From the IMG/VR virus record IMGVR_UViG_3300028592_000004, positions 62,001 to 126,000 of that record: a stretch of DNA of 64,000 nt; one strand, written 5' to 3'. The position numbers and the translations under genes were made by a program. Positions 27,535 through 63,975 of the stretch are shown in pieces. Below the pieces are notes generated by a model. That model was given only the letters and a program-made list of their open reading frames with translations. It made no database searches and was not told the origin of the DNA. Numbering within the stretch: the first letter of the stretch is position 1; the number at the start of each line of letters is the position of its first letter.

Positions 27535-27737
27535 TTTCCATCGAAACCGCGAGAGGTATGCGGTGGAGCAATTTCGCCTGTGAGACCTCGGCCTCGATCG
27601 CGAACGCTGACGTCGCGATTGCTCTGGTTGCAAGGCGGGCAGATGAAGTTGAACCGGCCGATCTTTGGGAACGGCTTTCGACATTTCAAACACAGCCGGG
27701 TCTCACGACCCGGCTGCGATTCATTCTCTTTGGACAT
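27531..27737 (-). CDS. small C4 zinc-finger protein
   Basis: CLKCRKPF...FICPPC. Confidence 0.7.
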   Translation of the reverse strand: MSKENESQPGRETRLCLKCRKPFPKIGRFNFICPPCNQSNRDVSVRDRGRGLTGEIAPPHTSRGFDGN

Positions 27738-27744
27738 CCTTGTC
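27733..27744 (-). promoter_or_regulatory. CsrA-type binding hairpin on start codon
   Basis: GACA-AGGA-UGUC containing the AUG at 27737. Confidence 0.65.
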
Positions 27745-27768
27745 TAACCTGCGACCATCCGGGTCGGC

Positions 27769-28995
27769 TTATTCGGCGGCTTTCGTCAGCTCCACAACGA
27801 ACGTCGCCTTCTTGTATTCGATCAGGTGTTTCCCGATCAACTTCGTGGGCATTTCCTTGCCCTCGGCGACGACCTTGCCCTTCTCGTTCACGACGTAGAC
27901 GTCGATGTAGGGCGCTTCGTTGCCGTCTTCGGACGCGCCACCATTGGTGATGGCGACGACGACCTTGTCGGTCGTATCCGGGATCGTCTTCTGGATCGTC
28001 AGCAGCGCTTCACCGTCGCCGACGTCCTTGACCTTCTTCTTCATCGTGAGGAACTTCTGAGCCTGCGCGAGCTTCTCGGCCTTGACCTTGATGGTCATGT
28101 TGGCCTCGACGTCCTTCTCGGGCTCTTCTTCGTACTCCGCGTCCTGCTCCGGCGTCGTCCGGGACTTCTTGCCCTTGGACTTCGCCTTCGCCGGCTTCGG
28201 ATCTTCCTCTTCTTCGTCCTCGTCCTTGGACGCCTTCGAGGACTTGCTGGACTTCGACGACTTGTTGGACTTGGAGCTCTTGCCCTTGGGGGCTTCCTCC
28301 TCTTCATCCTCTTCGTCTTCCTGCTCCTCCTCGTCCTCCTCTTCTTCGGCAGGCTTCTTGGACGACTTGGAGCTCTTCGAGGACTTACCCTTTGCCGGCT
28401 TCGGATCCTCTTCTTCCTCTTCGTCGTCCTCTTCTTCGTCCTCGTCCTCTTCCTCATCCTCCTCTTCTTCGGCAGGCTTCTTGGACGACTTGGAGGACTT
28501 GCCCTTGGCGGGCTTCGGATCCTCTTCCTCTTCGTCTTCGGACTCGTCGTCCTCCTGCTCATCCTCTTCTTCGTCCTCTTCCTCCTTCGAGGCCTTAGAC
28601 GACTTGGAGGACTTGCCGGCCTTGGCTTTGCCCTTCGCTTCGGCCTCTTCGACCGCGGCGAGACGGAGCTCGACGAACTCACTGAACTTGAGGTCCGGCT
28701 TCTCCAGCAGGAAGTCGAGGTACTCGATGTACGCCGCGGCCTGGCCTTCGGCGTCGAGCCCTTCCTCTTCCGCGAGGTTGCCCATCAGGTACGAGGGCAG
28801 ATCGATCGTCGGCTCTCCGTCGACAACGGAGTCCTTGAAGAACTGCTCGAACGTCAGGTCTTCGTTGTACTGCGAGGCGATCACGAACGCCTCACAGAGC
28901 GCGATGTCGCCGCCGGCCTGGACAAGCTCCGCCGGGAGCGATTCGAGAAGCTCCTTCGGAGTGAGGACCTTCGTCGACTTCTTCTTCGGTGCCAT
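27769..28995 (-). CDS. protein with long disordered acidic / Lys-Ser block repeats
   Basis: Repeated EEEDPKPAKGKSSKSSK units between two folded-looking ends. Confidence 0.75.
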   Translation of the reverse strand: MAPKKKSTKVLTPKELLESLPAELVQAGGDIALCEAFVIASQYNEDLTFEQFFKDSVVDGEPTIDLPSYLMGNLAEEEGLDAEGQAAAYIEYLDFLLEKPDLKFSEFVELRLAAVEEAEAKGKAKAGKSSKSSKASKEEEDEEEDEQEDDESEDEEEEDPKPAKGKSSKSSKKPAEEEEDEEEDEDEEEDDEEEEEDPKPAKGKSSKSSKSSKKPAEEEEDEEEQEDEEDEEEEAPKGKSSKSNKSSKSSKSSKASKDEDEEEEDPKPAKAKSKGKKSRTTPEQDAEYEEEPEKDVEANMTIKVKAEKLAQAQKFLTMKKKVKDVGDGEALLTIQKTIPDTTDKVVVAITNGGASEDGNEAPYIDVYVVNEKGKVVAEGKEMPTKLIGKHLIEYKKATFVVELTKAAE

Positions 28996-29036
28996 GCTTC
29001 ATTCTTCCTTCGAGTGGGTGCTCAGAGCAGAGCGAA

Positions 29037-29228
29037 CTAGGACTGGATCTCGGCCGCGGGGCCGGCAATTTTCGGCTGAAGTTCATCACGCCAGATACGG
29101 CAGTTGCTCGGCGCGTTGACGCCGATCCGTGCCTTATCCTGGCGGCTGTCGCAGAGGACGATCTCAATCAGACCATCACTGGTCTCGATGACGATCTTTT
29201 CGTTTTTCTTACGGGACAGGACGAGCAT
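29037..29228 (-). CDS. csrA: carbon storage regulator CsrA/RsmA homologue
   Basis: MLVLSRKKNEKIVI...ARIGVNAP..CRIWRDEL; start ATG 29228. Confidence 0.92.
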   Translation of the reverse strand: MLVLSRKKNEKIVIETSDGLIEIVLCDSRQDKARIGVNAPSNCRIWRDELQPKIAGPAAEIQS

Positions 29229-29311
29229 TTTCGAATCCTTCTTTTGACGTGGTGATAGCCCTCCTGGGCGTAGGGTAACTGGTCCGGGAAACCGACTACA
29301 AGGGCCGGAAT

Positions 29312-30277: not shown

Positions 30278-30287
30278 GGTCTTCCTT

Positions 30288-30305
30288 TCAATTCCCGCGG
30301 ATTGA
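30288..30305. promoter_or_regulatory. 18-bp palindromic operator-like motif
   Basis: TCAATTCCCGCGGATTGA, 10 nt before the GTG at 30277; identical inverted copy at 36838. Confidence 0.7.
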
Positions 30306-30338
30306 ACCGGACGCAGAATAGCCAGTCGGAGGAGCCTG

Positions 30339-30412
30339 CACTACGTTATGTCGTCGAAAAACCCCCACTACGTTATGTCGACATAACCCAGTTACCTATT
30401 ACAAGGTAATAG
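30339..30412. repeat. direct repeat and palindrome cluster (iteron/origin-like)
   Basis: CACTACGTTATGTCG at 30339 and 30366; perfect palindrome GTTATGTCGACATAAC 30372-30387; CTATTAC-aag-GTAATAG 30396-30412. Confidence 0.75.
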
Positions 30413-30571
30413 TGCGCCTCCACGGACGGCCGCTCCGCTCGAAGAGCGGCGGAGCGTATGCCGTCGTGTCGGCGGAATGGGATCAAAATCACGCCACGAA
30501 TGAATAGTGGCCCGGTGTCACGATCCTTCGATCAACCGGGCCACGCTCCGCCACCGGGCGATTCGATTCCG

Positions 30572-30856
30572 TCATCCACGACGTCGACACGATGCCAGCG
30601 CAGGTCTGAGTGTCTCCTCATCCGCGATCACCAGTCGTGCTCTGTCAGCTTCGAGCCAGACCGTGGCCCCGCACTTCAGGGGATCATCCGGCTGATACTT
30701 CAGCGTAGCGATCACCTTTCCCTGATCATCCACGATCTGGATCTTCTGCGCCTTCTCAATGCTCCGGTAGGTGCGAAGAGAGAGCGGCGGGTTACGACTG
30801 CCGGTCTTGCGATTACCGCGAAGGATGTGCTGATCGACGTGAATGATCGCCTTCAC
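30572..30856 (-). CDS. conserved phage hypothetical protein
   Basis: IHVDQH..R.N.K.G...P and PLKCGATVWLE pattern, which I recognise from many phage genomes. Confidence 0.7.
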   Translation of the reverse strand: MKAIIHVDQHILRGNRKTGSRNPPLSLRTYRSIEKAQKIQIVDDQGKVIATLKYQPDDPLKCGATVWLEADRARLVIADEETLRPALASCRRRG

Positions 30857-32122: not shown

Positions 32123-32135
32123 AGAGACCTCCTAG

Positions 32136-32531: not shown

Positions 32532-32534
32532 GGT

Positions 32535-33656
32535 TCAAACTGCCTGTGTGGTGGAACGGGGACGGGTCTTGAGGTAGCGGGTCAGCTCTTCGTCGCTCAT
32601 CTCGTCGAGCGCCATCTGAGCCGACAGCTCGTACGGCTGCATCCGCATGCCGTACACCTCGGGGATGCCTTCGATCATGCGCGTCTTCGCGCCGTAGAAG
32701 GCCAGGGGATACTTCGCCTTGACCATCTCGAAGATCTTGGCGAAGACAAAGCGGATCTCCCACTCCGCGAACTTGGCGGTCCGCATCAGCACGGTGTGCC
32801 GAAGCGTCCGCAAGTTGCACGAGAACGCGATCTCATTCGACTGACCGTTGGGAGCGATCCGCCGAATGGCGCTGGTCATCTTCTTCCGGATGTCGAAGTT
32901 GAAGGAGTTGTCCGGCTCCCACTTCAGGTGATGGGCCAGCTCAGCGACAACTTCACCACTCCAGTCTCCCGCGGCATCCTTTGGCGTACTGAGCAGCGCC
33001 TTGATGACGTCGGGTACGTGATCCCGGTAAGACTTCTCGATCAGGAGACCGGCATTCCGCACGGCGTTGTAGTTGCCGAAGGTGAGGTCTTCGGCGAACA
33101 GGTGCTTCGACAGACCGCCAGGCGGCTTCCGAAGACCGAGCCGGCACTCAGCCAGGTAGACCGTCTTCTCGATCTGGGCGGCGCACGTCTCGAACAGGTC
33201 CCGCACCGGATTCAGGATCGGGTCCCACACGAGCTGCATGTTCTCGATCCGACAGTAACGGCCGGACGTCTGACTGAACGCCGTGCCGATCCGATGTCGA
33301 ACGAGCTCATGGGTGAAGACCCGACTGCAGTCCCGAATCAGGAAGTTGAACTGGACGTGCTCGAAGATCGACCCGTGGGCCGTATCGAAGCATCCGACCA
33401 GGTTGTCCCAGATATCCCGGGTCCGCGACACGTTCGAGTTCTTCCCAAGCGTGAGGCTCTTGTAGCAGAGCTTCGCGAACATCGAGCAGAGGATCTCCGC
33501 CCACGACAGACCCTGCTTGAGGGCCAGGTCCACTGACTCCAGGAACTGCTGATTCCCGGTGTCGATCAGGTAGCGGCTGACCTCGTTCTCGTCGACCTGG
33601 GTGAAGCCAACGAAGTAGACGCTGGGCTGCACGAAACGTTCAAACTCATCATCCAT
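32535..33656 (-). CDS. thyX: flavin-dependent thymidylate synthase
   Basis: AKLCYKS, HGSIFEH, SRVFTHELVRHR, SQTSGRY. Confidence 0.92.
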   Translation of the reverse strand: MDDEFERFVQPSVYFVGFTQVDENEVSRYLIDTGNQQFLESVDLALKQGLSWAEILCSMFAKLCYKSLTLGKNSNVSRTRDIWDNLVGCFDTAHGSIFEHVQFNFLIRDCSRVFTHELVRHRIGTAFSQTSGRYCRIENMQLVWDPILNPVRDLFETCAAQIEKTVYLAECRLGLRKPPGGLSKHLFAEDLTFGNYNAVRNAGLLIEKSYRDHVPDVIKALLSTPKDAAGDWSGEVVAELAHHLKWEPDNSFNFDIRKKMTSAIRRIAPNGQSNEIAFSCNLRTLRHTVLMRTAKFAEWEIRFVFAKIFEMVKAKYPLAFYGAKTRMIEGIPEVYGMRMQPYELSAQMALDEMSDEELTRYLKTRPRSTTQAV

Positions 33657-33669
33657 TGTGAGGGTCCTT

Positions 33670-33687
33670 TCAAAACCCGCGGATTGG
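33670..33687. promoter_or_regulatory. 18-bp palindromic operator-like motif
   Basis: TCAAAACCCGCGGATTGG (15/18), 13 nt before thyX ATG. Confidence 0.65.
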
Positions 33688-33688
33688 A

Positions 33689-35153: not shown

Positions 35154-35185
35154 CGGAACGGCCCTCCAGAGCCCCAGGACAGCGT

Positions 35186-37282: not shown

Positions 37283-37473
37283 TGCTTTCGCTTTCGATTT
37301 GCCGGCGGTGTGTGGCCGGTCAGGTTGTTGATGAAGACGATGCAGAGGTACGTTCCGTAACCCACAACGAGCAGCAAGCCGAGCACAGGATAGCCCAGTC
37401 CCGGCAGAATTGAGAGCAACAGGAACGCAACCAGCATCAGGCCAACGGCGAAATTCAGTTGGCTTTTACCCAT
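37279..37473 (-). CDS. small two-helix membrane protein
   Basis: Hydrophobic 64 aa, GGAGG RBS. Confidence 0.65.
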   Translation of the reverse strand: MGKSQLNFAVGLMLVAFLLLSILPGLGYPVLGLLLVVGYGTYLCIVFINNLTGHTPPANRKRKQ

Positions 37474-37750
37474 GCGGCCACACCTCCGATTGCACGCGGT
37501 CAGGCGGCGGATTGCCGTTCGTGTCCTGCAGCAAGTACGGCAGGGGATACGGCGCCGTGAGAGACAAAAAGTGGGCCGGGTGGAGAGTAATGGAGAGTTT
37601 CGGGATTGGACCGCGACGCGTCGGCGTAATGCCTGCTCGCTCCAAGAAGTAAGAAGAGGCTTTGGAGATGATCATCCTATCGTCCCGAGAGAAGGCGTGC
37701 GGGCTCTGACCGCACGCGAATTCATTGACACGACTCATTCTGTCCGACAT
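37466..37750 (-). CDS. hypothetical protein
   Basis: 94-aa ORF, start lies in an ACAAGGATGT hairpin. Confidence 0.55.
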   Translation of the reverse strand: MSDRMSRVNEFACGQSPHAFSRDDRMIISKASSYFLERAGITPTRRGPIPKLSITLHPAHFLSLTAPYPLPYLLQDTNGNPPPDRVQSEVWPHG

Positions 37751-37923
37751 CCTTGTTCATCGCGACTGTCTTTGAAGACGGCTTTGACGATCAGAGCGCA
37801 AGCACTGAAAAACAACCCGCCGGCCACCTCGAAGGCGAACTGCAGGAAGCCCAACTCAGTGCCGTGTGTCGGCGGACACGCTCGCAAACGAATGACTCGC
37901 TCGCGACGGAATTGATTACGCAT
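37735..37923 (-). CDS. possible small membrane protein
   Basis: MRNQFRR...FLQFAFEVAGGLFFSACALIVKAVF, one hydrophobic helix. Confidence 0.4.
   Translation of the reverse strand: MRNQFRRERVIRLRACPPTHGTELGFLQFAFEVAGGLFFSACALIVKAVFKDSRDEQGCRTE
37747..37756 (-). promoter_or_regulatory. CsrA-type binding hairpin on start codon
   Basis: ACA-AGGA-UGU containing the AUG at 37750. Confidence 0.55.
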
Positions 37924-43172: not shown

Positions 43173-44345
43173 ATGACCATCCTTGATCAGACCTCGGATC
43201 TCTCCGGCATCGAGACTGCGCGTGTGATGCAGGCCTACAGGGCTCCGGGTTACGTGAAGCAGGCATCTGTCTCCACGGCTCCCGAGAACGCTGCAGACTC
43301 GCGCCTCTACGCCGACTCCGTGCAGCGGAAGTTTCCGGTGCACACCAAGGCAGCGACGTGGCTGTCGAACGCATTCTGGTGCGAGAAGCGGGCGAATGTC
43401 CAGCCCGCCGATCGGCAACGCATCCAGACCGCTCTTCTCAAGGCCGCAGACTTCTACGGCATCCGTGCCGAAGTCGACTCGCTATACAAGCAGGCCGAAG
43501 TCGACAACGATGAGAACAAGCTGCCGGATGACGCCTTCGCCTTCCTTGGGGAAGACGCCAGTGGTAATCGTACGCGGCACATGCCGATGCGTACGGCCCT
43601 GGAAACGAAAACCGCTGCAGCTTTCTTCGTCGAGCACCGTGACCGTTTCACCTTTCCACAGCAGCAGAAGGTCGCAGTCCGGATCCTCGACAAGGCCGCA
43701 TCCCAGGGAGCAGGCCTGACGAACGAGGTCGATCAGATCCTTTCCCGGTGTGCAGGCTTCGGGATGTGCGCTGCCTCCCGAACGGCGGAATTCGTAGAGA
43801 AGCGGGCCGCGATGATCAAGTACTCGGATGGGAAGCTCTCGCAGCAGCTCATCGACACCGCGCAGGCCATCCGGAATAACCCGGAGCACGCCCGCCAGCC
43901 GGCCATCCTGGTCAAGCTCGCTGAGCAGCTCGACGTTCTCGATCGCCGCTTCCAGTTCAACAAGCGGTATCACCAGGACATTGAGCGTCCGGCGGATGTG
44001 CTGTTCGAGGTCAACGAGTTTTCGGTCAAGCAGGCCGCGGCCGATCACATCCAGATGACGAGCGGCTCGGTCTACCGGATCTCCGACCTGAACCACGTCA
44101 AGCTGGCGGACGTTCGCGACTACCTCGGCACCGACCTGGCTGACGCCCTCACGGACGACGGCATGACTGTCAGCCTGGAGAAGGCTGCCACGATCCTCCC
44201 GACGTTGCCCCGCGGTGACGCGGAGACGTTCGATCGGGTGGTCGAGTCGGTCATCCGGCCGGTGACGAAGATGGCAGCTGCCCGTGCCGGTCTCAGCCGG
44301 ACGGAGATGTGGGACCTGGCGATGCAGGCGTCTGGCAACCGCTAG
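43173..44345 (+). CDS. hypothetical protein, probably virion-associated
   Basis: 390-aa ORF with strong codon bias, YADSVQRKFPVHTKAATWLS and repeated KxAA/KQAS motifs. Confidence 0.75.
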   Translation: MTILDQTSDLSGIETARVMQAYRAPGYVKQASVSTAPENAADSRLYADSVQRKFPVHTKAATWLSNAFWCEKRANVQPADRQRIQTALLKAADFYGIRAEVDSLYKQAEVDNDENKLPDDAFAFLGEDASGNRTRHMPMRTALETKTAAAFFVEHRDRFTFPQQQKVAVRILDKAASQGAGLTNEVDQILSRCAGFGMCAASRTAEFVEKRAAMIKYSDGKLSQQLIDTAQAIRNNPEHARQPAILVKLAEQLDVLDRRFQFNKRYHQDIERPADVLFEVNEFSVKQAAADHIQMTSGSVYRISDLNHVKLADVRDYLGTDLADALTDDGMTVSLEKAATILPTLPRGDAETFDRVVESVIRPVTKMAAARAGLSRTEMWDLAMQASGNR

Positions 44346-47500: not shown

Positions 47501-49189
47501 TCAGTTGGTGTCGAGGTTACGAGCCCGGCTGGGCCGTCTCGTGCTCCTCGACTCTTTGGTGGCGGGACGGGCGAACGAGCTGCAGAACTTGCGGATTTCA
47601 TCCAGCATGTCCTTCTGGCTCTTGAAGATCGTACTCTCGCCGCGCTTGGCGGCGGCTTCTTCGATCATCTCCAGGGTGGGCACGTGACGGCCATGCTCGA
47701 AGGCCGTCAGCCGCGAGTTGATGACGACGTCCTCCAGTTCCGATCCGACGAAGTTTTCCGTCATATCGAGAACAGAGCGCCACTTGTCGCTGCCGAGCTC
47801 TTTTTCGAGCCGCTCGATGCTGACTCCGCGCTTGGCGAAGTGAACTTCCAGGATCTCCCTGCGAACGTTGGGCGAGGGGACATCCGTGAAGTACGTCTCA
47901 TCGAACCGCCGGAAGAACTCTGGCGCCACGCCGGCGACGGAGTTCATCGTGACGACGATGAACGTGTCGTTCCGCTCCTCCTGCATCCAGTTCAGGAGCC
48001 GGCCGCGGACGCGGTTGGCGACTTCGTGTCCGCCGTCCGCGCTCTGCCCCATCGTCTTTTCGAACTCGTCGAAAACGGCGACGCAGCCGCGGTGCGCAGA
48101 CAGCTTGGTCAGCACGTTCTCCAGCCGATTCTCTGACTGACCGACGTACTGTCCGAAGATCTCACCGACGTTCACCCAGTAGCTGGGGAACGCCTGGCCG
48201 CAGACCTCCTGGAAGATGCCTGCGATGATCTTCGCGAACTGCGACTTCCCGGAGCCCGGGACGCCGATCAGCGCGATGCCGCGAGGCGTGTCGAGCTTCG
48301 CTTCCTTGCCGCCGTCCGTGTAGGCGAGGGCTCGACGACGAATATCCGGGATGCAGTTGTCGAAGCCGCACACCTCGTCGAGGTTCGGGATTTGATTCGG
48401 CGAGATGTACTTGAGCACACCGCCGGAACCGACCAGCCGCGCCTTCTGATCCCGGATCGTGAGCATCATCTCGGGGCAGAACCCCTTCTGCTCGATGATG
48501 GCCAGCGACAGGGCGTCGGATGCCTGCTGTCGGGAGAGGCCCCGCAGCGACGCGGAGATGCTGTTCCGCATCCCCGGTTCGAGTTCCTTCGTCTTATCGC
48601 CCCGACCGTGCTGGAACGACGCATGGACGTAGTCCACGATCGATCCGAGCTCTTCCTGATTCGGATGCGGAAGCGGCAAGGGCTGCAGCAGGTGCTGCAG
48701 CTCCGGATGGAGCGTCGGCACCGACTGGATGAAGAAGATCGGCCGCGAGAACGTCGCGTTCGACAGTTGCTGCTCGACGATCAGGTTCTGGAGCAGCTGT
48801 CTGGCTGTGACCGACTGGTCCAGCACGGCATGCAGGTTGTGCATGACGACGATCGCCGACTGGATCATCGACGGGAGCGCTGTCAGGACGCTCAGTGCCT
48901 GGATTGGATCCCGGTACTTCGCTTCGCCCAGAAGATCCTTCTGCTGAGTCGCGGCGGCGCCCTTTACGATGAAGCCGCGGTGGACGTCCCACTGAATGAA
49001 GCTGTAGGTCGCCAGGTCCTTCTTCGTTTGCCGGCGAGCGTCCATCTCAGTGGCGACGCTCTCAAGAATCATGGCCGCGTTTCGCGGCTCTTCGGTCTGC
49101 ACGACGACGGCCTGAAAGCCGGCACGAACCAGATTCGTGGCCTGTCGCGTGAACTCAGTTTGATGCTGCTTGATCTTCAGATCGGCCAT
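47501..49189 (-). CDS. Ycf46-like AAA+ ATPase
   Basis: GVPGSGKS, VFDEFEK, TMN...PEFFRRFDE; inactive N-terminal AAA-like module. Confidence 0.85.
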   Translation of the reverse strand: MADLKIKQHQTEFTRQATNLVRAGFQAVVVQTEEPRNAAMILESVATEMDARRQTKKDLATYSFIQWDVHRGFIVKGAAATQQKDLLGEAKYRDPIQALSVLTALPSMIQSAIVVMHNLHAVLDQSVTARQLLQNLIVEQQLSNATFSRPIFFIQSVPTLHPELQHLLQPLPLPHPNQEELGSIVDYVHASFQHGRGDKTKELEPGMRNSISASLRGLSRQQASDALSLAIIEQKGFCPEMMLTIRDQKARLVGSGGVLKYISPNQIPNLDEVCGFDNCIPDIRRRALAYTDGGKEAKLDTPRGIALIGVPGSGKSQFAKIIAGIFQEVCGQAFPSYWVNVGEIFGQYVGQSENRLENVLTKLSAHRGCVAVFDEFEKTMGQSADGGHEVANRVRGRLLNWMQEERNDTFIVVTMNSVAGVAPEFFRRFDETYFTDVPSPNVRREILEVHFAKRGVSIERLEKELGSDKWRSVLDMTENFVGSELEDVVINSRLTAFEHGRHVPTLEMIEEAAAKRGESTIFKSQKDMLDEIRKFCSSFARPATKESRSTRRPSRARNLDTN

Positions 49190-49859
49190 TCGAACTTCCG
49201 TTGGCAGTGATGGATTGAATCAGCTGCTCGGTGGTTCCGTTCTCCAGAACCAGCGAGCTCAGTTGTCGGAGCAGGGCCTGAACCCCCTCACGGATGATGG
49301 CGTTGATCTCGTCGGTTTTCGACCGCTCCATGTCGAAAATTGCGTTGAACATGACGGGATCGTCGGCGAAGTCGCCTTGCACGTTGGCAGCCTCTGGCCG
49401 CACGGCAATCTTGAGCACATCCGGAGGGACCATGATGCCCTCCTGATCGAGCACGACCCCGATGTACCGGCAGATCTCCGGCGAGAAGGGGTCGTCTTCT
49501 TCCGGCGGATTGAGGAGCATGGCCTCGCTGATTCCCCAGGCACACTCCTCGGCATCCGCCGGGTCGAATGTGGTTGGGTCGAACGTGCTGCCGGAAAGCA
49601 CGTTGCACAGCATGATGAAGTCGGGGGTCAGCTTGAAGAAGCGGTCCGACGTCAGAATGGCGATCCCTGCCATCAGACGGTCGAGGATCCCGCGAGCTAG
49701 CTGGAGATTGAAATCCGACTGCAGCTCCATCCGGATCGTCTCAGCGTCCCACTGAAGACTCTCAGGACCGTACGTGTCCATCAGGATCACGACGAGCGGC
49801 GTCGCGTACGTGTCACGACTCTGGAGGAGTTTGCGCTTGCTGTCCTTGCTGCGACTCAT
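49155..49859 (-). CDS. conserved jumbo-phage hypothetical protein
   Basis: 234-aa ORF, YGPESLQWD and FIMLCNVLSG...ECAWGISEA. Confidence 0.7.
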   Translation of the reverse strand: MSRSKDSKRKLLQSRDTYATPLVVILMDTYGPESLQWDAETIRMELQSDFNLQLARGILDRLMAGIAILTSDRFFKLTPDFIMLCNVLSGSTFDPTTFDPADAEECAWGISEAMLLNPPEEDDPFSPEICRYIGVVLDQEGIMVPPDVLKIAVRPEAANVQGDFADDPVMFNAIFDMERSKTDEINAIIREGVQALLRQLSSLVLENGTTEQLIQSITANGSSNGRSEDQAASN

Positions 49860-51315: not shown

Positions 51316-51630
51316 TCAAGATTTAGCGCGGCGGATTGTGATTTCCTTACGACGACTTCCGCGACGAACAACGACCCGGATCTGCCTCGCGTTCAGGGCC
51401 TCGAACACCGCCTCTTTTGCAGTCCCCGAAAGCGAGACGAGGCATTCCTTGGCATTCGAGTAGAGGTTGTCGAGCTGAGCTCTGACGGCACCACGCTTGC
51501 AGGGTCTGCAGCCAGACATCGAGGGCCGATTCTTGTGAGCCTGAAGTAGACATGGGACCGCCTCCCTGACAGTCGTGTTGGCGATGAGCGCGTCGATCGT
51601 CGCATCTTCGATGTAGACCAGGTTCTTCAT
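51316..51630 (-). CDS. hypothetical protein (Cys motif)
   Basis: 104 aa, GGAG RBS, GCRPC. Confidence 0.65.
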   Translation of the reverse strand: MKNLVYIEDATIDALIANTTVREAVPCLLQAHKNRPSMSGCRPCKRGAVRAQLDNLYSNAKECLVSLSGTAKEAVFEALNARQIRVVVRRGSRRKEITIRRAKS

Positions 51631-52058
51631 GCCGCATCTCCGATTCGAACTTCATCCTCCTCGCTGAGGTCTTCCATCAGCTTGATCGTGTCTCGCAGCG
51701 CAGACACTTCATCGACCAGAGTGCGGTAGGCCTCCTCCAGCTCGTGACGCGATCGGAAGACGAGGTCGACGTAGGCCAGACGGAACCAAGGCGGATCAGC
51801 CGTTGTGTACGGTTCGTTGATCGGAAATTCTTCCAGGTCGGCCGGCGAGCAGACGCCGTCGAAGACACCCCACTGCTCGCTCTCGACTTCCTCTTCTTCG
51901 TCATTGAGGGAGTTTGGCTGCAGAGGGATCGCCCGATATCGAAAGACCTCGTTGGGCATGTTGAGCCCATCCGAGGCTGTCACACGCATGCGGAACCCGT
52001 CAATGTTGCCGGCCTGGTAGGTCTGGAACTCTGGGGTCAGCGTGATGCCGTAGTTCAT
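51627..52058 (-). CDS. hypothetical protein, probably structural
   Basis: 143 aa, start lies in AGTTCATGGATGAACT hairpin. Confidence 0.7.
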   Translation of the reverse strand: MNYGITLTPEFQTYQAGNIDGFRMRVTASDGLNMPNEVFRYRAIPLQPNSLNDEEEEVESEQWGVFDGVCSPADLEEFPINEPYTTADPPWFRLAYVDLVFRSRHELEEAYRTLVDEVSALRDTIKLMEDLSEEDEVRIGDAA

Positions 52059-52067
52059 CCATGAACT
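52052..52067 (-). promoter_or_regulatory. CsrA-type binding hairpin on start codon
   Basis: AGUUCA-UGGA-UGAACU containing the AUG at 52058. Confidence 0.65.
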
Positions 52068-52068
52068 C

Positions 52069-52446
52069 CTAGAAGGTCACTTTGAGGTGCTTTCCATTCT
52101 TGCGGTAGAGGATGGCACAACCATCTACAGGGTATCCGATCTTGCCCTGGATGAAGAGACGCACTCGCTCTCGTACTTCAGGGCTCGCGTTGCTGATGAC
52201 TTCCACGAAGGAGTTCCGATAGCCGTCGATCGTCTTGCTGCCCGGCCCGCAGCACTGATTCGTGCTCAGCTCCGAGAGCATGACCTGATACGCCGGCACG
52301 GTGTAGACGCCGAACCCGCGGAACTCCGGGCAGGCCGCGAAAAAGGTGGGATCACCGAGTAGTTGCCGGAGCAGCTCCTTGGTGACGATCAGGAAGTTAG
52401 GCCCGGATGCTTCTCGCTCAGTCCGCGGCGGGGAACTGCCGACCAT
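52069..52446 (-). CDS. hypothetical protein, apparent paralogue of 51316..51630
   Basis: Start MVGSSPP at 52446; similar helix/Cys layout. Confidence 0.55.
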   Translation of the reverse strand: MVGSSPPRTEREASGPNFLIVTKELLRQLLGDPTFFAACPEFRGFGVYTVPAYQVMLSELSTNQCCGPGSKTIDGYRNSFVEVISNASPEVRERVRLFIQGKIGYPVDGCAILYRKNGKHLKVTF

Positions 52447-54224
52447 TCGATGACGTCCTTCCGCAGGGAGAACTGCTGAATCTTGAGGCCTTGCTGATAC
52501 ACCGCGGCGCCATTCATGACGTCTCCGCCGTTGTGACCGAGACGCAGGTCTGGGATGTTTGCTTGCCGCATTGCCGATGTCCGGATCGCCCAGAAGGCAC
52601 CAACAGGAAAGTGGACACGGTCGCCGCTCGCCTGGGTTCGTCCAAAGCTGTCCTGCCAGGGCCGGCCCGTGTACCACGAACCACCCGCGGCCCACGCTTT
52701 CTGCCCTGGCGTCAGCCGATAGTGCTTCACTGGACCGAGCATGTCCGCGTTAGTAGCGACGATCTTCTGCGCCAGGATCTGCATCCAGCGGGCATCCCGA
52801 TCGCAGAACGTGTCGTCGTCCATCCAGATCAGGTAAGGCGTCTCGATCGGCAGCTCCGGGTCGTAGAACATCTCCCGCATCACCGGGTACTTCTTGGCGT
52901 TCTCGACGTGCTGGTAGTGCTTGCGGATCAGGTTCTGGCTGACGAGTTCTTCCACCAGCTTCAACGACTCGGGTCCGAGTTCGTTGCTGCCGATCCGCAG
53001 ATCCATCCGATCGCGAGGCACGGTGCTGGTGATGGCGTGTAGGAACCGCCGGTGCATTTCGGGGTAGTCGCCATACAGCAGGCCGAAGATCGTAAAGCGT
53101 CCACCAATCTTGGGGTGATCGAAGATGGAGTGATCCACAGGCTGTCCGATGACTCTCAGCTGGAACTGGCTTGCCGGCGCCGGCTTCTTTGTCAGGCTGC
53201 GGCGGACCGTTCCATCGTTCTTGTGATCCAGGCTGGTCCGGTCAATCTGGAAGAGCGGCTCGGCCTTGTCGATCGCCTGAAGCGTGCCATCCGTGTAGTA
53301 CGACATGACAGCGTCTACGACCATCTCCGGCGAGATCATGTCGAGGCACTTCGGCACGGTCTCTTCGCCTTGCCGAATCGGATAGACGCAGTTCTGGCTC
53401 GGGTCGTCGCCGACGACTTTGCTTCGCCAGCAGCCGTGATGCTCGCAGCAGTCGAGCTGGCCGATCGTGTGCAGGAATCGGTGTGGGACCTGGATCTTCT
53501 CGGGACAGACCAGGCCGGAGTTCTCTCGGATGTAAGCCTCCCACCACCACGCCTCACGTCCGCCGGCCAGACAGACGCACGGCTTCTGCAGAGCTGCGGC
53601 GGCGTGCATCAGCATCGTCACACCGCAGATGGCGCCATCAGCGCCGTGGAGCAATCGCAGGACATCTCGAAGGGTCGTCTTGTTGACGAGGTTGATGACT
53701 CCCCTGAGTTCCGGGTGCCAGTTGTTCTTCGCGTCGGTTCCGATATGGACGACGTTGATGCCACGCTCCGCCAGCATGTCGACAACACGCTGAAAGCGAT
53801 CGATCCGCCACACCTTCGCAGGCATGTCGGCCTTCCCGCCCGAGATCATGATCCAGTACCGACCGCTGAAGATGCGCGTCTTTTCATACGCGCTCAGGTG
53901 GAGATCCGGATAGGGCTGTGTCACCGGAGCGACGAGGCCCGTCCGCTTCTGCAGGTCTCGGTGAAACCACGGCATGAAGTGGACGACTTCGTTCCGCTGG
54001 GCCTTGATCCCCTCGCCGTACTCCAGCTGGACAACTCGGCTCTCTTTCGGAAAGCCCGATCCCGTGTTGTGGAGGCGGATATGCGGGTTGTTCTCCCACA
54101 AGGCACTGTAGGTCGTCATCACGCCGATCTCGACATCCGGTCGAGCCAGGGCAAGATCCCGGACCACACCCGTCATGGCGATGATATCGCCGGGCGCCCG
54201 CCTATGCTTCAGCACCAGCTTCAC
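52389..54224 (-). CDS. GT9 (ADP-heptose heptosyltransferase-like) fused to a GT-A domain
   Basis: GDIIAM, PAKVW...F, NKTTLRDV, LMHAAAALQKP (GT9); C-terminal IWMDDDTF. Confidence 0.85.
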   Translation of the reverse strand: MKLVLKHRRAPGDIIAMTGVVRDLALARPDVEIGVMTTYSALWENNPHIRLHNTGSGFPKESRVVQLEYGEGIKAQRNEVVHFMPWFHRDLQKRTGLVAPVTQPYPDLHLSAYEKTRIFSGRYWIMISGGKADMPAKVWRIDRFQRVVDMLAERGINVVHIGTDAKNNWHPELRGVINLVNKTTLRDVLRLLHGADGAICGVTMLMHAAAALQKPCVCLAGGREAWWWEAYIRENSGLVCPEKIQVPHRFLHTIGQLDCCEHHGCWRSKVVGDDPSQNCVYPIRQGEETVPKCLDMISPEMVVDAVMSYYTDGTLQAIDKAEPLFQIDRTSLDHKNDGTVRRSLTKKPAPASQFQLRVIGQPVDHSIFDHPKIGGRFTIFGLLYGDYPEMHRRFLHAITSTVPRDRMDLRIGSNELGPESLKLVEELVSQNLIRKHYQHVENAKKYPVMREMFYDPELPIETPYLIWMDDDTFCDRDARWMQILAQKIVATNADMLGPVKHYRLTPGQKAWAAGGSWYTGRPWQDSFGRTQASGDRVHFPVGAFWAIRTSAMRQANIPDLRLGHNGGDVMNGAAVYQQGLKIQQFSLRKDVIEWSAVPRRGLSEKHPGLTS

Positions 54225-54236
54225 GATGAATCCTTT

Positions 54237-55166
54237 CTACTCGGCCAGCATGGTCTGGACCGTCTTGTCCGCCCACTCGTTCAAGGCCTCGGCGCCGTAC
54301 GCGAGATCGAACCAGGCTTTGCCCGTTTCAGCGACGTACTGGTAGGCCCCTGCCGAAAGCAGCGTCACAATCTGGTCGAAGGCTTCCTGGGGCGTCTCTG
54401 TCCACTCGACTCCGATCGGGCTCGCCCAGTCGAGGACCTTCTGCATGGGCTGTGCAATGCAGCAGCAGCCGGAGGCCAGCCCCTCGAACAGCCGAAAGCT
54501 GTAGTCGGCACATCCGCGGAGGCACAGCAGGATCTTCGACTGCTGGAGGAGGTTGGCGAATCCACCCTGCTGCCCGAGATGCTTCTCGTTCCGGAGGAAG
54601 CTGAACGGTTGGCCCGCCGCCTTCCAGATGGACTCAAACTCGTCGAGCCACGTCACCCGATAGACCATCGAGCTGCCCATGAACACGTTCTCGTTCCCGG
54701 ACCACACGACGTCATACGTGCGATCCTGGGACAGGGCCTCACGGATCTGCTGCAGCGGAATGGCCGGCACCCCGTACGGCATCTGCACGTCAACGATCCG
54801 CTCGTTTCGAAAGTGATCCATCGAGTAGTGCGGCTTCCAGAGACAGTTCTGGATCGAGCGGCAGGAATAGATCGCCGGGCAGTCGTCCTGTCGATAGGCC
54901 CATGCCTTCTTTGCCTGGAGCGGCACGTCGAAGGTGGGTGCCTGGTAGACCTGGCACAGCAGATGAAGGTCGAAGGGCAGATCGCGACCCGCTTCCGTCA
55001 GCAGTGCGGAGAGCTCGGCTTTGCCCCGGAGAGTGGCCTTCAGGAGAGCGAAGTCCACCGTGTGTCCGAGACGCTCGAAAGCCGCCTGCAGGAGCTTGTA
55101 GTGCTCGAAGTCGACGAGATGATTGTCGCGAACCGCGGTGATGCCGATGTGCATGGTCACTTCCAT
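54237..55166 (-). CDS. GT-B glycosyltransferase (Glyco_trans_1_2/CgeB-like)
   Basis: LLQQSKILLCLRG...SFRLFEGLASGCCCI. Confidence 0.7.
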   Translation of the reverse strand: MEVTMHIGITAVRDNHLVDFEHYKLLQAAFERLGHTVDFALLKATLRGKAELSALLTEAGRDLPFDLHLLCQVYQAPTFDVPLQAKKAWAYRQDDCPAIYSCRSIQNCLWKPHYSMDHFRNERIVDVQMPYGVPAIPLQQIREALSQDRTYDVVWSGNENVFMGSSMVYRVTWLDEFESIWKAAGQPFSFLRNEKHLGQQGGFANLLQQSKILLCLRGCADYSFRLFEGLASGCCCIAQPMQKVLDWASPIGVEWTETPQEAFDQIVTLLSAGAYQYVAETGKAWFDLAYGAEALNEWADKTVQTMLAE

Positions 55167-55980: not shown

Positions 55981-55982
55981 CG

Positions 55983-56660
55983 CTACGGGACTGTGGCCAT
56001 GATGGTAGTTTTCGTGACCTGCAGGCCTTGAGGACCGCAAGACACGTCGGTGACGACTTCGAGTTCTTCCCCACCACCGCCACCCTGACTGCCCTCACCG
56101 GGAGGTCCTTGCGGTCCTTGCGGGCCGGCAGGACCTTGCGTGCCTTCGCCTTGAGGGCCAGGAGGTCCCTGCGGGCCGTCCCCGCCCTGGGGACCCGGAG
56201 GCCCCTGCGGTCCACCGTAAGGCCCCTGCGGGCCGGCCGGACCGGGCGGACCTTGGGCGCCATCACCGCCGGCAGGACCGATCGGTCCCTGTGCACCGGT
56301 GAAGCCGATCGGACCGATCGGTCCGGGCTGCCCGGGTACGCCGATTGGCCCCTGGACGCCTTGCGGTCCTTGAGGACCCTGCGGTCCTTGTGGTCCTTGA
56401 GGCCCCTGCGGTCCTTGTGGTCCCTGAGGTCCCTGTGGACCTTGTGGTCCTTGAGGACCTTGAAGTCCCTGCGGACCTTGAGGGCCGTCGATCCCCTGCG
56501 GACCCTGCAGACCGGCTGCGCCGGAGGGCGGGATCTCCAGAGGCGGCGTAGTGCATCCGCGGATCGGATCCGGAATGTCAGGCTGTTCGCACGTGTCGAA
56601 CAGGTTGAAGTCCGTGACGCGTGCGAGATCGCATCCGGTACAGGGCTGGTCGGTGGACAC
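55983..56660 (-). CDS. collagen-like protein
   Basis: ~50 contiguous G-X-Y triplets dominated by GPQ. Confidence 0.9.
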
Positions 56661-57580
56661 TATTCACCTCCCAGCGAGAACTGTTCAACCTCTTGGCAGT
56701 AGTCGAGGTCACTGAGTCCGAAGTCGATAATCAGCTTCGACGGGTTGTCTTCGGCAACTGAGATCGAGACACCGCGGGCCGACAACAGCTGTATGTACCG
56801 GGCTGTGACGCCATTGAGCGAGGTAATCCGGTCATTGCACGCCGGACCGCCGGTCAGAAGGCTCGACAGGGACTCTTCATCATCGGAGATCGGGATCTCT
56901 TCGCAAGGGGCGCCGGCGCCGGCGCCGACACTCGCCGAGAACAGGAGGGAGTTCTCTGTCGTGTTCGTGCGGATCGCGCAGTTGTAGCCCTCCATGAAAC
57001 GGAGGCTTCCAGACAAGCATTGGCTGTCGACGAAGATCGGCGGTGAGTCGTCCAGGGAGAGGGACTCCTCAACACAGTCATCCGGCAGCGTTGCGCGGAC
57101 GCGGTCCTCGTTGCCGAGGCTGACCGATCGCAGAAAGGTGCCGTGCAGCGTCTGGATCCGGGAAGGCTCGATACGCACGCCCGTTTCGAACGTGAGGGCC
57201 TCGCTGATCTCCAGGTTGAGCTTCGACAGCCGGCCGACCTGCAGGTAGCCCTCCCAGAGAGGCGGCTCGTCGCAGGCGTTCTCCCCAGCAGCCGACTCAG
57301 CACTGTAGATGGTGAACTCGCCCGCGGCGACCGGTACTTCGAACGTCAGCCGCTCCGACAGGACCGAGCAGCCAAATTCGAACTCGAACGTGTCTGCGTC
57401 GACACGCCGGATCTCAACTAGCCAGACGTAATCATCGGCAGTGAAATCGACCTCGGGACCGAGCAGGCACCCGAAGTCAACGATGACAGCTTCCGGCGGG
57501 AACTCAATGCCGAGATCCTCCCGGTCAACGAGAGGATAGCTGCGGAACTCATTGTCATTGAGCCATCCTGGCTGCGACAT
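56660..57580 (-). CDS. putative baseplate/tail structural protein
   Basis: [24 protein letters not shown]; paralogous motifs shared with the next three genes. Confidence 0.65.
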
Positions 57581-57586
57581 CCTGTC
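57576..57586 (-). promoter_or_regulatory. CsrB-repeat-like CAGGAUG hairpin on start codon
   Basis: GAC-AGGAU-GUC containing the AUG at 57580. Confidence 0.5.
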
Positions 57587-61629: not shown

Positions 61630-61631
61630 CG

Positions 61632-62102
61632 TTAGACCGGGTTGGAGGTGGACAGAGTGAGGGCTTCGCGGAACAGGTCGTCTACGTCGTTCTCGTCCTT
61701 CCCGAGGAACTGCTTGAACAGAAGCACCGAGGGATGATCGCGACGGACGTACGGGGCGTACTGTACGTCGTCCATGAGGTCCTCGTTGCCTGGAGCCAGA
61801 ATGTACTGATCAATCAGGTCTAGAGCAGTGACAATCTCCGGATCATCGTAAATGACCAGCCGCCGCAGAGCTTTCCGGAGGCCGTGCATGGCGACGGTGT
61901 CCGGCACAGGCGATGCGTTCCAGTCCCAGCCTGCAAGAACAGCGTTGGCGGCGGTCTGCTGTTCCTCCGTCGCTTCCGGAAGGAATGAGATCGATGACTG
62001 TGACACGCCTTCGATGGGAAGTCCCAGATCCAGGAGGTGCCGGTGAAGGTCCTGAAGGCGTCCACCCAGTTTTTCCAACTCAGCTGAGATGCTCACACCC
62101 AC
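61632..62102 (-). CDS. tail-fibre-associated small protein (chaperone-like)
   Basis: Directly downstream of fibre gene; LRKAL and DVDDLFREA resemble fibre-assembly proteins. Confidence 0.5.
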
Positions 62103-63967
62103 ACCAGTCCTTTGACATCGTAGTAGTAGAAGGTCGAGTTATTCGTTCCGGTCGCAGACTCGCTGACGTAGTAGATTACATAACCCGTGCTGGGTGCGAG
62201 TGGCAGCGCAAAGCCGTCTCCAACAGCGGCGGCAGCGCTATGGTCAATGACCAGGGCCGGCGTAGTCGACGTCGAGGTTCCGAGACCCAGACGAGCGCCC
62301 TGAGTACCAGCACCGGACGGCAACATCGCGCCGACGAGCGACAACATTGGAGCTCGGGACGGGAAAGTGGATACCCACTCCAAAGTCGCTCCGCTGCCGT
62401 TATTCCATCCGCGAATGGTCGTGGAGCTGTATGTGTGACTGTTCACATAGTCCGATCGAGCCAGCAACTTCGGCACAGGATTCAGCGCGTTCGACACGAA
62501 CCGCTTTGTCACAGAGTCTTCGGTCGTGGTCGTGCTGGTCGTACGAATCGTACCGAGCAGGATGGCTTGATTCGCACTAACGACGTTTCCGCTGATCACG
62601 CCGGTGATCTGGGACGCGTTGGTCTGTATACCGTGGAGCCATTCGATTGAAATGGCCCGGTCGGTATCGTTGGTCCACGCAACGTAGTCCAGGGTGAAGC
62701 TACCGCTGTTCACGTAGCCGTAGACGTCGTAGTTCTTGCCGCTCGTCAGGCCGGTCAGCGTTCGGCCGATCTGCGAAAAGACGTATGGCACCCACATGGT
62801 GCCGTTCCAGATGGTGACAAGGTTGCCGTTGTAGGGCGTGAAGAAGACGCTCGATGAGCCGGTGACGTCGCTCGTTGTGACGGGCACGCCGGTGGTCAGC
62901 GTCAGCCGTCCGGACATCGGAACGTTGGCCGCGTATCCCGCCACGGTCGAGTTGTTGGCGAACAGCCAGCCGGTGAGATTCGTCGTTGTCGATGACGTCA
63001 CCTGGTTCGGACCAACGGCGCCCTGAGCACCCTGGTTTCCCTGGGTGCCTTGCGGACCTTGAGTTCCTTGCGGACCGGCAGCGCCTTGGGCTCCCTGGTT
63101 TCCCTGGGGACCCTGTGCTCCGGCTGCTCCCTGGTTGCCTTGCGGACCTTGTGCTCCAGCCGCACCCTGATTCCCCTGGGGACCCTGCGCCCCAGCGGCA
63201 CCCTGATTGCCCTGATTGCCTTGGGTGCCCTGATTCCCCTGCGGTCCCTGCGGGCCAGCGGGTCCCTGGGGACCGGTCGCACCTACGGCCCCGGGTTCAC
63301 CCTGTGGGCCAATATCGCCCTGGGGTCCGACATCACCCTGCGGGCCGGTGTTGCCGGTCGCACCGGTAGCACCTTGCGGTCCCTGCGGGCCGGCAGGTCC
63401 CTGTGGACCAACCATCGACACAACGACGGCGTCGTTCCAGTTGTAGTCGACCAGCTTGGGGCCGAACATTACGTTGAGGTCGGTCCGGATGTAGAAGTCG
63501 CCGGTCTTGCCGTACAACGCGTCGGGATCGCCTACGCCACTGAGAACCGTGTTGCCGTCAGCGCCGGCTGCCCCGTTGGATCCTGCAGCCCCCTGGGGTC
63601 CGGTCGCACCCTGCGGACCCTGAGCGCCCGTTCCGCCGGCCGCGCCGGCAGCTCCCTGAGGTCCCTGCGGACCCGTGGCCCCTTGCGGACCCGTGTCCCC
63701 ATCATCCCCGTCGTTGCCGGCCGGACCTTCCGGACCTTGTGCACCAGTGGCGCCCTGAGGACCCGCCCCGCCAGTAGCACCGGCGGCACCCTGGGCGCCT
63801 TGGGCTCCCTGCGCTCCCTGTGGCCCGGAGAGGCCTTCTGCGATCTTGGCTTCGATCGTGACCACCAGGTCACGCATCGACTGCGCCTTGATCCACTTTC
63901 GGGTGCCATCCTTGAAGATCCCGTCCGGACCCAGGAAGTCATCCCATTCGCGAATTGTGTCAGGCAT
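62093..63967 (-). CDS. collagen-like tail fibre protein
   Basis: Two long G-X-Y tracts split by [17 protein letters not shown]; C-terminal [11 protein letters not shown]...FTPYNGN fibre domain. Confidence 0.85.
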
Positions 63968-63975
63968 CCTTGCCT
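63962..63975 (-). promoter_or_regulatory. CsrA-type binding hairpin on start codon
   Basis: AGGCA-AGGA-UGCCU containing the AUG at 63967. Confidence 0.65.

What the first reader, a model, noticed from the sequence alone, without database searches (positions are those of the whole stretch)
27733..63975. Phage-encoded CsrA with a built-in regulon: CA(N)GGAUG hairpins placed on start codons
Seen: csrA at 29037-29228 keeps the RNA-binding N-terminal LVLSR and the distal R of IWRDE. Five genes start with an AUG inside a self-complementary GGA-loop hairpin: GACA-AGGA-UGUC (27737), ACA-AGGA-UGU (37750), AGUUCA-UGGA-UGAACU (52058), GAC-AGGAU-GUC (57580) and AGGCA-AGGA-UGCCU (63967). The RAMP gene start overlaps AUCCA-CGGA-UGGAU. 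The GGA abuts the AUG, so it cannot act as a Shine-Dalgarno. Established: CsrA/RsmA binds (R)UACARGGAUGU / CANGGAUG with GGA in a loop, and CAGGAUG is the CsrB repeat. Inference: the phage uses its own (or host) CsrA as a translational switch for timing or stoichiometry of virion genes (fibre, baseplate) and the RAMP gene. I am not aware of phage CsrA targets having been defined this way.
Basis: partly seen in the sequence, partly recalled or inferred. Interest (0 to 1): 0.8.

Follow-up and report, generated by a model that had tools for sequence, protein, structure and literature searches.

The report
Phage CsrA with start-codon GGA hairpins
A 229-kb soil phage carries its own copy of the bacterial RNA-binding repressor CsrA, and far more of its genes than chance allows begin with an AUG set in a small GGA-loop hairpin of the kind CsrA binds, so the phage probably throttles translation of some of its own genes this way, though no binding has been measured.

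Summary
The csrA gene (29037-29228, minus strand) is a clear CsrA/RsmA family member.

I extended the phage to 122 kb and called genes without using the motif. Of 87 AUG starts, 14 are GGAUG, and 6 of those have the GGA in a 3-4 nt loop closed by at least 4 base pairs, with the A of AUG as the last loop base. Among 355 other GGAUG sites, only 6 do (Fisher p = 7e-7). Shuffling the upstream sequence predicts 0.08-0.15 such starts.

Hairpins in general are not enriched at starts; only GGA-loop hairpins are.

The sites fit the published Rsm/CsrA consensus (A/U)CANGGANG(U/A). Site 52058 differs from the high-affinity hcnA hairpin core only at the N position. An Rsm site spanning a start codon is already known in Pseudomonas putida cfcR.

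Distant relatives of the phage also show CANGGAUG at starts (6 of 91, against about 0.4% elsewhere). The hairpins themselves are mostly not conserved, and CsrA-encoding phages in general lack the pattern.

The feature is real and CsrA operators are the best explanation, but binding is untested.

The parts
29037..29228 (-). csrA, 63 aa, CsrA/RsmA family RNA-binding protein. Its own leader carries AAGAAGGAUUC 7 nt before the AUG.
   Evidence: Translation; Pfam PF02599 E=1.9e-15; alignment to RsmE/CsrA structures; also called and Pfam-labelled CsrA in the ENA record; leader sequence.
63962..63975 (-). Hairpin AGGCA-AGGA-UGCCU on the start codon (63967) of the collagen-like tail fibre gene 62093-63967.
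   Evidence: pairing probability of the closing C:G 0.76 in a 70-nt fold; fibre annotation.
57576..57586 (-). Hairpin GACA-GGA-UGUC on the start codon (57580) of a 306-aa gene, 56660-57580.
   Evidence: The same N-terminus is held letter for letter in the ESM Atlas. In the 70-nt fold this hairpin is outcompeted, P=0.04.
57561..57573 (-). Second hairpin AGCCA-GGA-UGGCU, 14 nt downstream of the 57580 start, inside codons 4-8.
   Evidence: formed in the minimum-energy fold.
52052..52067 (-). Hairpin AGUUCA-UGGA-UGAACU on the start codon (52058) of a 143-aa gene, 51627-52058. The core UUCAUGGAUGAA differs from the hcnA RsmE-binding hairpin only at the N position.
   Evidence: hcnA sequence from PMC13287468. 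The gene is conserved in relatives.
37747..37756 (-). ACA-AGGA-UGU (3 bp only) on the first AUG (37750) of a 94-aa ORF, 37466-37750, the first ORF of a minus-strand operon divergent from the terminase gene. Weakest site.
   Evidence: Not predicted to fold. ORF not called by the ENA gene caller.
27733..27744 (-). Hairpin GACA-AGGA-UGUC on the AUG (27737) of a 68-aa zinc-ribbon-like ORF, 27531-27737.
   Evidence: P(closing pair)=0.65. ORF not called by the ENA caller, but CxxC...CxxC is visible in the translation.
27752..27766 (-). Upstream companion hairpin CGACC-CGGAU-GGUCG, 21 nt before the 27737 AUG.
18793..18806 (-). Hairpin AUCCA-CGGA-UGGAU, 5 nt upstream of the probable start (18788) of a 161/163-aa protein with a RAMP-like predicted fold (18303-18794). 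A Shine-Dalgarno-position site.
   Evidence: start 18788 from the ENA call (27) and the Atlas record (65); RAMP-like fold TM 0.68.
25309..25325 (-). Hairpin CAGUAC-GGGAU-GUACUG, 13-29 nt upstream of the start at 25296. Possible further site; not part of the strict class.

Best explanation
The window is part of a 229-kb soil phage whose host is probably a planctomycete. The phage encodes a functional-looking CsrA.

Six AUG starts in the 122 kb examined are built into a short hairpin whose loop is (N)GGA and whose 3' arm begins with the UG of the AUG. Four are in the window: 63967, 57580, 52058 and 27737. Two are just outside: window-equivalent 66706 (contig 128706) and -10358 (contig 51642). 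There is also a 3-bp version at 37750 and a Shine-Dalgarno-position version at 18793-18806.

This is the shape and sequence that CsrA/RsmA proteins recognise. The most likely mechanism is that a CsrA dimer, from the phage and possibly also the host, clamps the GGA loop, covers the start codon and lowers translation of these genes until CsrA is titrated or diluted.

Shown: the gene, the sites, their non-random excess at starts, and their match to the published consensus. Inferred: binding, repression, which CsrA acts, and the purpose (timing or dosage of fibre and other virion-region genes).
For: - CsrA identity.
- Sites present.
- Excess at starts: 6/14 against 6/355, p=7e-7; shuffles expect 0.08-0.15.
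- Overall hairpin density at starts equals expectation (30 vs 31). Only one non-GGA hairpin sits in the same register, at 18189. So the signal is specific to GGA loops.
- GGA is the top trinucleotide of 20 tested for being in a loop near starts, but only modestly (OR 2.1, p=0.014).
- Folding puts GGA in the loop with high probability at 66706, -10358, 63967, 27737 and 52058.
- Consensus (A/U)CANGGANG(U/A), and a precedent of an Rsm site spanning a start codon (PMC6849547).
- hcnA high-affinity hairpin core UUCACGGAUGAA against the phage's UUCAUGGAUGAA (PMC13287468).
- Two companion GGA hairpins 14 and 21 nt away, within the spacing a CsrA dimer is known to bridge; the spacing range is from my own knowledge of the CsrA literature.
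- Relatives of the phage show CANGGAUG at 6/91 called starts against about 0.4% in 6,000 start-like AUGs of other phage loci.
- One orthologous pair (L246:722, L247:1049) keeps a 5-bp hairpin around A(G/A)GGAUG through a compensatory U-A to A-U change.
- Several members of this phage clade carry csrA.
Against: - No binding or expression data exist. The only public runs holding the phage are soil DNA.
- The hairpins are not conserved at the orthologues of 66706, 57580 and 52058 in relatives sharing 30-45% protein identity.
- Hairpins are not significantly enriched at GG-AUG starts of those relatives (2/9 vs 25/220).
- Other CsrA-encoding phages, including clade members L068, L041, L051 and L044, show no such sites near csrA.
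- The ordinary ribosome-binding site of this phage is itself (G)AAAGGA, so GGA is common near starts and some excess is expected.
- Two target ORFs are uncalled by an independent caller.
- Two sites (57580, 37750) are not favoured in thermodynamic folds.
- No CsrB-like sponge RNA was found.
- Most sites lie within 26 nt of an upstream stop codon, which also fits plain translational coupling.
Confidence: 0.5

Rival explanations
1. The hairpins are purely cis-acting structures for translational coupling or damping. The start codon is partly locked in a small stem and is opened by the ribosome finishing the upstream gene. No CsrA is involved, and the GGA loop is left over from Shine-Dalgarno-like sequence.
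For: Five of the six strict sites start within 26 nt of the upstream stop codon or overlap the upstream gene. Five of the six also have a separate upstream Shine-Dalgarno. Stems vary freely in sequence.
Against: Hairpins as such are not enriched at starts (30 vs 31 expected). In this exact register 6 of 7 have a GGA loop. A coupling stem has no need for a fixed loop, and such stems usually sequester the Shine-Dalgarno, which here is left free. The loop plus closing pairs reproduce the CsrA consensus and the hcnA hairpin.
Confidence: 0.2
2. Another trans-acting factor reads these hairpins: a phage endoribonuclease or hairpin-binding protein (for example the RAMP-fold protein at 18303-18788), or the host's CsrA alone with the phage CsrA aimed at host mRNAs.
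For: The phage encodes a small protein with a RAMP-like predicted fold, a fold class that includes hairpin-binding RNases. Published proposals for phage CsrA focus on host targets such as CRISPR-Cas (PMC8450108). The closest cellular CsrA proteins are planctomycete, so the host very likely has its own.
Against: Nothing links the RAMP-like protein to GGA loops. The motif matches CsrA specificity in detail. If host CsrA is the binder, the sites are still CsrA operators, so this differs from the best explanation only in who supplies the protein.
Confidence: 0.15
3. Chance, helped by purine-rich, GGA-rich sequence upstream of starts and by the reader having picked the pattern after seeing it.
For: The general test (GGA in any 3-6 nt loop within -30..+20 of starts) is only OR 2.1, p=0.014, and would not survive correction for 20 trinucleotides. 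The second hold-out block of 20 kb gave 0 of 3. The pattern is absent from most other CsrA phages.
Against: The strict class gives p=7e-7 against non-start GGAUG, and none of 100,000 composition-preserving shuffles came close. CANGGAUG also recurs at starts in independently fetched relatives.
Confidence: 0.12

Closest known systems
Rsm/CsrA repression of P. putida cfcR through a CANGGANG motif spanning the start codon (Huertas-Rosales et al. 2017, PMC6849547)
   Same: The GGA-containing motif includes the AUG itself. A separate Shine-Dalgarno lies upstream. Repression is by occluding the initiation region.
   Different: cfcR is a single chromosomal gene bound by host Rsm proteins. Here there is a set of 6-8 phage genes, with the regulator encoded on the same phage. 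Binding here is untested.
RsmE bound to the hcnA ribosome-binding-site hairpin (Schubert et al. 2007 as cited in PMC6849547; RNA sequence in PMC13287468)
   Same: A stem closed by C:G around an A-N-G-G-A-U loop. The phage site at 52058 has the same 12-nt core apart from the N position.
   Different: In hcnA the GGA is the Shine-Dalgarno. In the phage the GGA overlaps the start codon and the Shine-Dalgarno is elsewhere.
Phage- and plasmid-borne CsrA/RsmA homologues (Sobrero and Valverde 2020, PMC7366521; Campa et al. 2021, PMC8450108; plasmid RsmQ, PMC9928087)
   Same: A mobile element carries its own CsrA family protein. Such genes are known in about 1% of phage genomes and in IMG/VR contigs.
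   Different: Those studies surveyed presence or showed effects on host mRNAs. None that I found defines targets inside the phage's own genome.
Phage T4 RegA translational repressor (from my own knowledge; not checked in the paper library)
   Same: A phage-encoded small RNA-binding protein that represses a set of the phage's own mRNAs by binding at or next to their AUG.
   Different: The protein fold is unrelated. RegA recognises an A/U-rich linear site rather than a GGA hairpin. This is an analogy of logic only.

Membership tests
CsrA/RsmA protein family (Pfam PF02599) | Profile match above the curated threshold over the whole domain | tested here: met
   57 bits against a cut-off of 27, E=1.9e-15, residues 1-54 on profile 1-51 of 53. 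The ENA record's product also carries PF02599.
CsrA/RsmA protein family (Pfam PF02599) | Conserved RNA-contact residues: N-terminal strand (L2, L4, R6) and the last strand (R44 in the V-H-R-E-E stretch), plus the R-I-G-x-N-A-P core | tested here: met
   Alignment to RsmE 2JPP and E. coli CsrA 1Y00 gives MLVLSRK vs MLILTRK, RIGVNAP vs RIGINAP, and IWRDE vs VHREE with the arginine kept. Which residues contact RNA is from my knowledge of the RsmE-hcnA structure.
CsrA/RsmA protein family (Pfam PF02599) | Interleaved homodimer fold and binding of GGA RNA | not tested
CsrA/Rsm operator on an mRNA | Sequence fits (A/U)CANGGANG(U/A) or the SELEX core ACARGGAUGU | tested here: met
   CANGGAUG at starts 66706, 63967, 52058, 37750 and 27737. 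ACAAGGAUGU is exact at 27737 and 37750. CAGGAUG at 57580 and -10358. Consensus from PMC6849547.
CsrA/Rsm operator on an mRNA | GGA presented in the loop of a hairpin | tested here: met
   At least 4 Watson-Crick pairs at six starts. Fold probabilities are 0.56-1.0 at five of them. The first 57580 hairpin and the 37750 site do not meet this.
CsrA/Rsm operator on an mRNA | Overlaps the ribosome-binding region and is more frequent there than elsewhere | tested here: met
   6/14 GG-AUG starts against 6/355 other GGAUG, p=7e-7; shuffles expect 0.08-0.15.
CsrA/Rsm operator on an mRNA | Bound by CsrA with an effect on translation | not testable with these tools
   Needs gel shift, toeprint or reporter assays.
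CsrB/RsmZ-type sponge RNA | Non-coding RNA with many GGA hairpins in a row | tested here: not met
   No Rfam family at gathering score in the window. No cluster of more than four GGA-loop hairpins within 150 nt anywhere in 102 kb.

The most novel reading that the evidence does not exclude
A jumbo phage runs a self-contained post-transcriptional circuit. It carries its own CsrA plus a set of hcnA-like operators built onto the start codons of its own fibre and virion-region genes. This would be the first defined CsrA regulon inside a virus, a functional counterpart of T4 RegA that arose from a captured host regulator.
Probability: 0.4. Interest if true: 0.75.

Novelty: new variant of a known kind. 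Interest (0 to 1): 0.6.

Why it matters
CsrA genes are known on about 1% of phages and on many IMG/VR contigs. Published ideas about their role point at host mRNAs, and I found no paper that names a target on the phage's own genome. Here the candidate operators can be read directly from the sequence. They are few and short, and each comes with a built-in control: change the loop and keep the stem. That makes the question 'what does a phage CsrA do' testable with a handful of gel shifts and reporters. If confirmed, it would show a virus turning a captured global host regulator into a private translational switch for its own genes.

Tried and rejected
- Raw CANGGATG count against dinucleotide shuffles (19 vs 9.8). 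Rejected as evidence, because all internal coding-strand copies sit in one codon frame.
- Megablast of 12 kb against GenBank phages: no match.
- Close relatives for aligning the leaders: none. The terminase and the 408-aa protein found only the phage itself. The nearest relatives share 30-49% protein identity, so the leaders cannot be aligned.
- A collagen-rich query returned 79 unrelated loci. I reused them as a control set.
- Rfam and tRNA scans: nothing.
- Search for a sponge RNA: nothing.
- Other CsrA phage loci: no pattern.
- Planctomycete chromosomal csrA neighbourhoods: no such starts.
- Public reads: only soil DNA. One strain variant has 14 differences in 6 kb, none in a hairpin, which is uninformative.
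- Function of the targets: Pfam, PHROGs and Atlas gave only weak leads for the 306-aa and 590-aa proteins, so 'baseplate' is not supported.
- The ENA copy of the contig could not be read as DNA.
Full report
WHAT THE WINDOW IS

The 64-kb window is positions 62001-126000 of a 229,210-bp viral contig from a soil metagenome, IMGVR_UViG_3300028592_000004, also filed as Ga0247822_10000001. It is about 60% G+C, and almost all genes are on the minus strand.

It encodes a DNA polymerase, a helicase, a UvsX-like recombinase, an SbcC-like protein, ThyX, a DNA ligase, a large terminase, a collagen-like tail fibre and several sugar-handling enzymes. It is therefore a large tailed phage.

The nearest cellular relatives of its CsrA, at about 50% identity, are almost all from Planctomycetota. 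That makes a planctomycete the likeliest host.

The ordinary ribosome-binding site of the phage reads (G)AAAGGA or AGGAG, 5-9 nt before the start. GGA is therefore common upstream of genes here, and any test has to allow for that.

THE PROTEIN

29037-29228 (-) gives a 63-aa protein. It matches Pfam CsrA at 57 bits against a cut-off of 27. It aligns over its full length with RsmE and CsrA structures, keeping the N-terminal MLxLxRK strand, the RIGxNAP core and the arginine of the last strand. Membership of the CsrA/RsmA family is secure. Dimer formation and RNA binding were not tested.

THE SITES

Several details need correcting.

- The GGA shares its A with the AUG rather than abutting it.
- Three of the five quoted starts (52058, 57580, 63967) also have a normal Shine-Dalgarno upstream, as do the two hold-out sites 66706 and -10358.
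- The small ORFs at 27737 and 37750 were not called in the ENA copy of the contig. The first has a CxxC...CxxC zinc-ribbon pattern and the second overlaps the next gene's start by 8 nt, so both are plausible genes.
- The starts at 57580 and 66706 are backed by independent records that hold exactly the same proteins.
- The 163-aa protein does have a RAMP-like predicted fold (TM 0.68). Two independent records start it at 18788, which places the 18793-18806 hairpin at the Shine-Dalgarno position.

IS IT MORE THAN CHANCE?

The simple excess of CANGGATG (19 vs 9.8) is misleading. All nine internal coding-strand copies are in the frame xxC-ANG-GAU-Gxx, which is a codon-usage effect.

I therefore fetched more of the same phage, 121,970 bp in all. 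I called genes from codon usage alone, without using any ribosome-binding-site or hairpin information.

Results:
- There are 133 genes and 87 AUG starts. Fourteen starts are GGAUG.
- Six of the 14 have the GGA in a 3- or 4-nt loop, with the A of AUG as the last loop base and at least four Watson-Crick pairs.
- Among the 355 other GGAUG on both strands, six do (Fisher p = 7e-7).
- Shuffling the 14 nt upstream of every start predicts 0.08 such starts. Shuffling with the GG held fixed predicts 0.15. No shuffle gave more than four in 100,000 trials.
- In 2.4 Mb of other phage loci the rate among GGAUG is 1.6%.

Two of the six, at window-equivalent 66706 (UGCCA-AGGA-UGGCA, a 590-aa gene) and -10358 (GAUCA-GGA-UGAUC, a 54-aa gene), lie outside the window. 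Over the whole 58 kb of hold-out the score is 2 of 7 GG-AUG starts, which has roughly a 0.006 probability at a 1.7% base rate.

Hairpins in general are not enriched at starts (30 found, 31 expected). In this register only one start hairpin has a non-GGA loop, at 18189.

A looser test, GGA in any small loop within -30..+20 of a start, is only modestly positive (10.7% vs 5.4%, p = 0.014). GGA is nevertheless the top trinucleotide of the twenty tried.

Thermodynamic folding of 70-nt contexts puts the GGA in the loop at 66706, -10358, 63967, 27737 and 52058. It does not do so for the first 57580 hairpin or for 37750.

Four further GGAUG hairpins lie within 25 nt of a start: 27752-27766, 57561-57573, 25309-25325 and 18793-18806.

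WHAT THE SITES LOOK LIKE

The Rsm/CsrA contact consensus is (A/U)CANGGANG(U/A), and the SELEX consensus is RUACARGGAUGU (PMC6849547).
- Sites 27737 and 37750 carry ACAAGGAUGU exactly.
- The core of 52058 is UUCAUGGAUGAA. The high-affinity hcnA hairpin used for RsmE structures is UUCACGGAUGAA within GGGCUUCACGGAUGAAGCCC (PMC13287468).
- An Rsm site that spans a start codon, with a separate Shine-Dalgarno upstream, is documented for P. putida cfcR (PMC6849547).

The proposed mechanism is therefore an established one. What is unusual is a set of such sites on a phage that carries the regulator itself.

RELATIVES

No close relative exists in the collections searched. Distant relatives sharing 30-49% identity in structural proteins were reached through the 604-aa protein.

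- At their 91 called starts, nine are GGAUG and six of those are CANGGAUG. The rate is about 0.4% of start-like AUGs in 157 other phage loci.
- The hairpins at the orthologues of 66706 and 57580 are absent. The orthologue of 52058 in L247 keeps only a 3-bp version.
- Hairpins are not significantly enriched in these relatives (2/9 vs 25/220).
- One orthologous pair, L246:722 and L247:1049, has a 5-bp stem around A(G/A)GGAUG. A U-A pair in one is an A-U pair in the other, and the downstream change is a synonymous glycine codon.
- Several clade members carry csrA, but at different places in the genome, and their csrA neighbourhoods show no such starts.
- CsrA-encoding phages in general do not show the pattern (2/221). 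Planctomycete chromosomal csrA neighbourhoods do not either.

INTERPRETATION

The start-codon GGA hairpins are a real, non-random feature of this phage. The best explanation is that they are CsrA operators (confidence about 0.5).

Rivals:
- Plain coupling or damping stems without a protein partner. This fits their position just after upstream stop codons, but does not explain the constant loop.
- Another reader of the hairpins, or host CsrA alone.
- Chance.

I found no sponge RNA and no expression data. A strain variant in another soil sample has too few differences to test the stems.

NOVELTY

Phage csrA genes are known (PMC7366521; PMC8450108). So are plasmid copies acting on host mRNAs (PMC9928087, listed). 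I found no report of targets inside a phage genome. This is best described as a new variant of a known kind. In logic it resembles T4 RegA (my own knowledge). It is moderately to highly interesting because it is directly testable.

Noticed in passing
window 27516-27526, 3975-3985, 30287-30297 (minus strand); variant near 33656; also contig 57305 region (window-equivalent -4695): An 11-nt motif CGGGAAUUGAA, often preceded by AAUC(N)CGC, sits directly against or a few nt before at least four start codons: three exact copies in the window (7 matches with one mismatch allowed, vs 1.1 expected) and one more in the hold-out. It can form an imperfect hairpin with the GGA in the stem. It may be a second shared translation-initiation or promoter-proximal element.
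   Followed up: partly
window 18181-18198 (minus strand): A 7-bp hairpin GUCUCCA-UCUA-UGGAGAC in the same register on the start codon of the helicase gene (16642-18189). It is the only non-GGA start hairpin of this kind.
   Followed up: no
window 18303-18794 (minus strand): A 161/163-aa protein with no Pfam or PHROG hit. It belongs to virus-only clusters, and its predicted structure resembles RAMP-superfamily (Csm4-like) domains at TM 0.64-0.68.
   Followed up: partly
window 27693-27716 (minus strand): A perfect 10-bp GC-rich hairpin with a GUGA loop followed by UGUUUGAAAU, looking like an intrinsic terminator for the highly codon-biased 408-aa gene upstream. It lies inside codons 8-15 of the 68-aa zinc-ribbon ORF.
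   Followed up: no
window 26079-27515, 52389-54224, 54237-55166 (minus strand): A sugar-nucleotide toolkit: an HldE-like fused kinase/cytidylyltransferase-family protein, a family-9 heptosyltransferase fused to a family-2 glycosyltransferase, and a further glycosyltransferase-like protein. This suggests heptose-based glycosylation by the phage.
   Followed up: no
L033:7810-7850: In another CsrA-encoding viral contig, an 11-bp perfect stem encloses the loop UAGGAUG, whose AUG opens a 344-codon ORF.
   Followed up: no
window 27737-27711 and 37750-37725 (minus strand): The two small ORFs share ACAAGGAUGUC followed by a similar AGAAUGA(A/G)UCG a few nt later, about 22 of 27 positions alike. This hints at a duplicated leader rather than two independent sites.
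   Followed up: no
L068, L041, L051 around position 10001/4788; L044:10001: In relatives of this phage csrA sits at other genomic positions: after the homologue of gene 49155-49859, next to the homologue of 43173-44345. The gene has therefore moved or been gained more than once in the clade.
   Followed up: partly
window 56100-56520: Contigs from many unrelated soil organisms lay on this stretch at 85-90% likeness. It is probably a collagen-like or other low-complexity repeat in the ORF 55983-56660, which my gene caller dropped.
   Followed up: no
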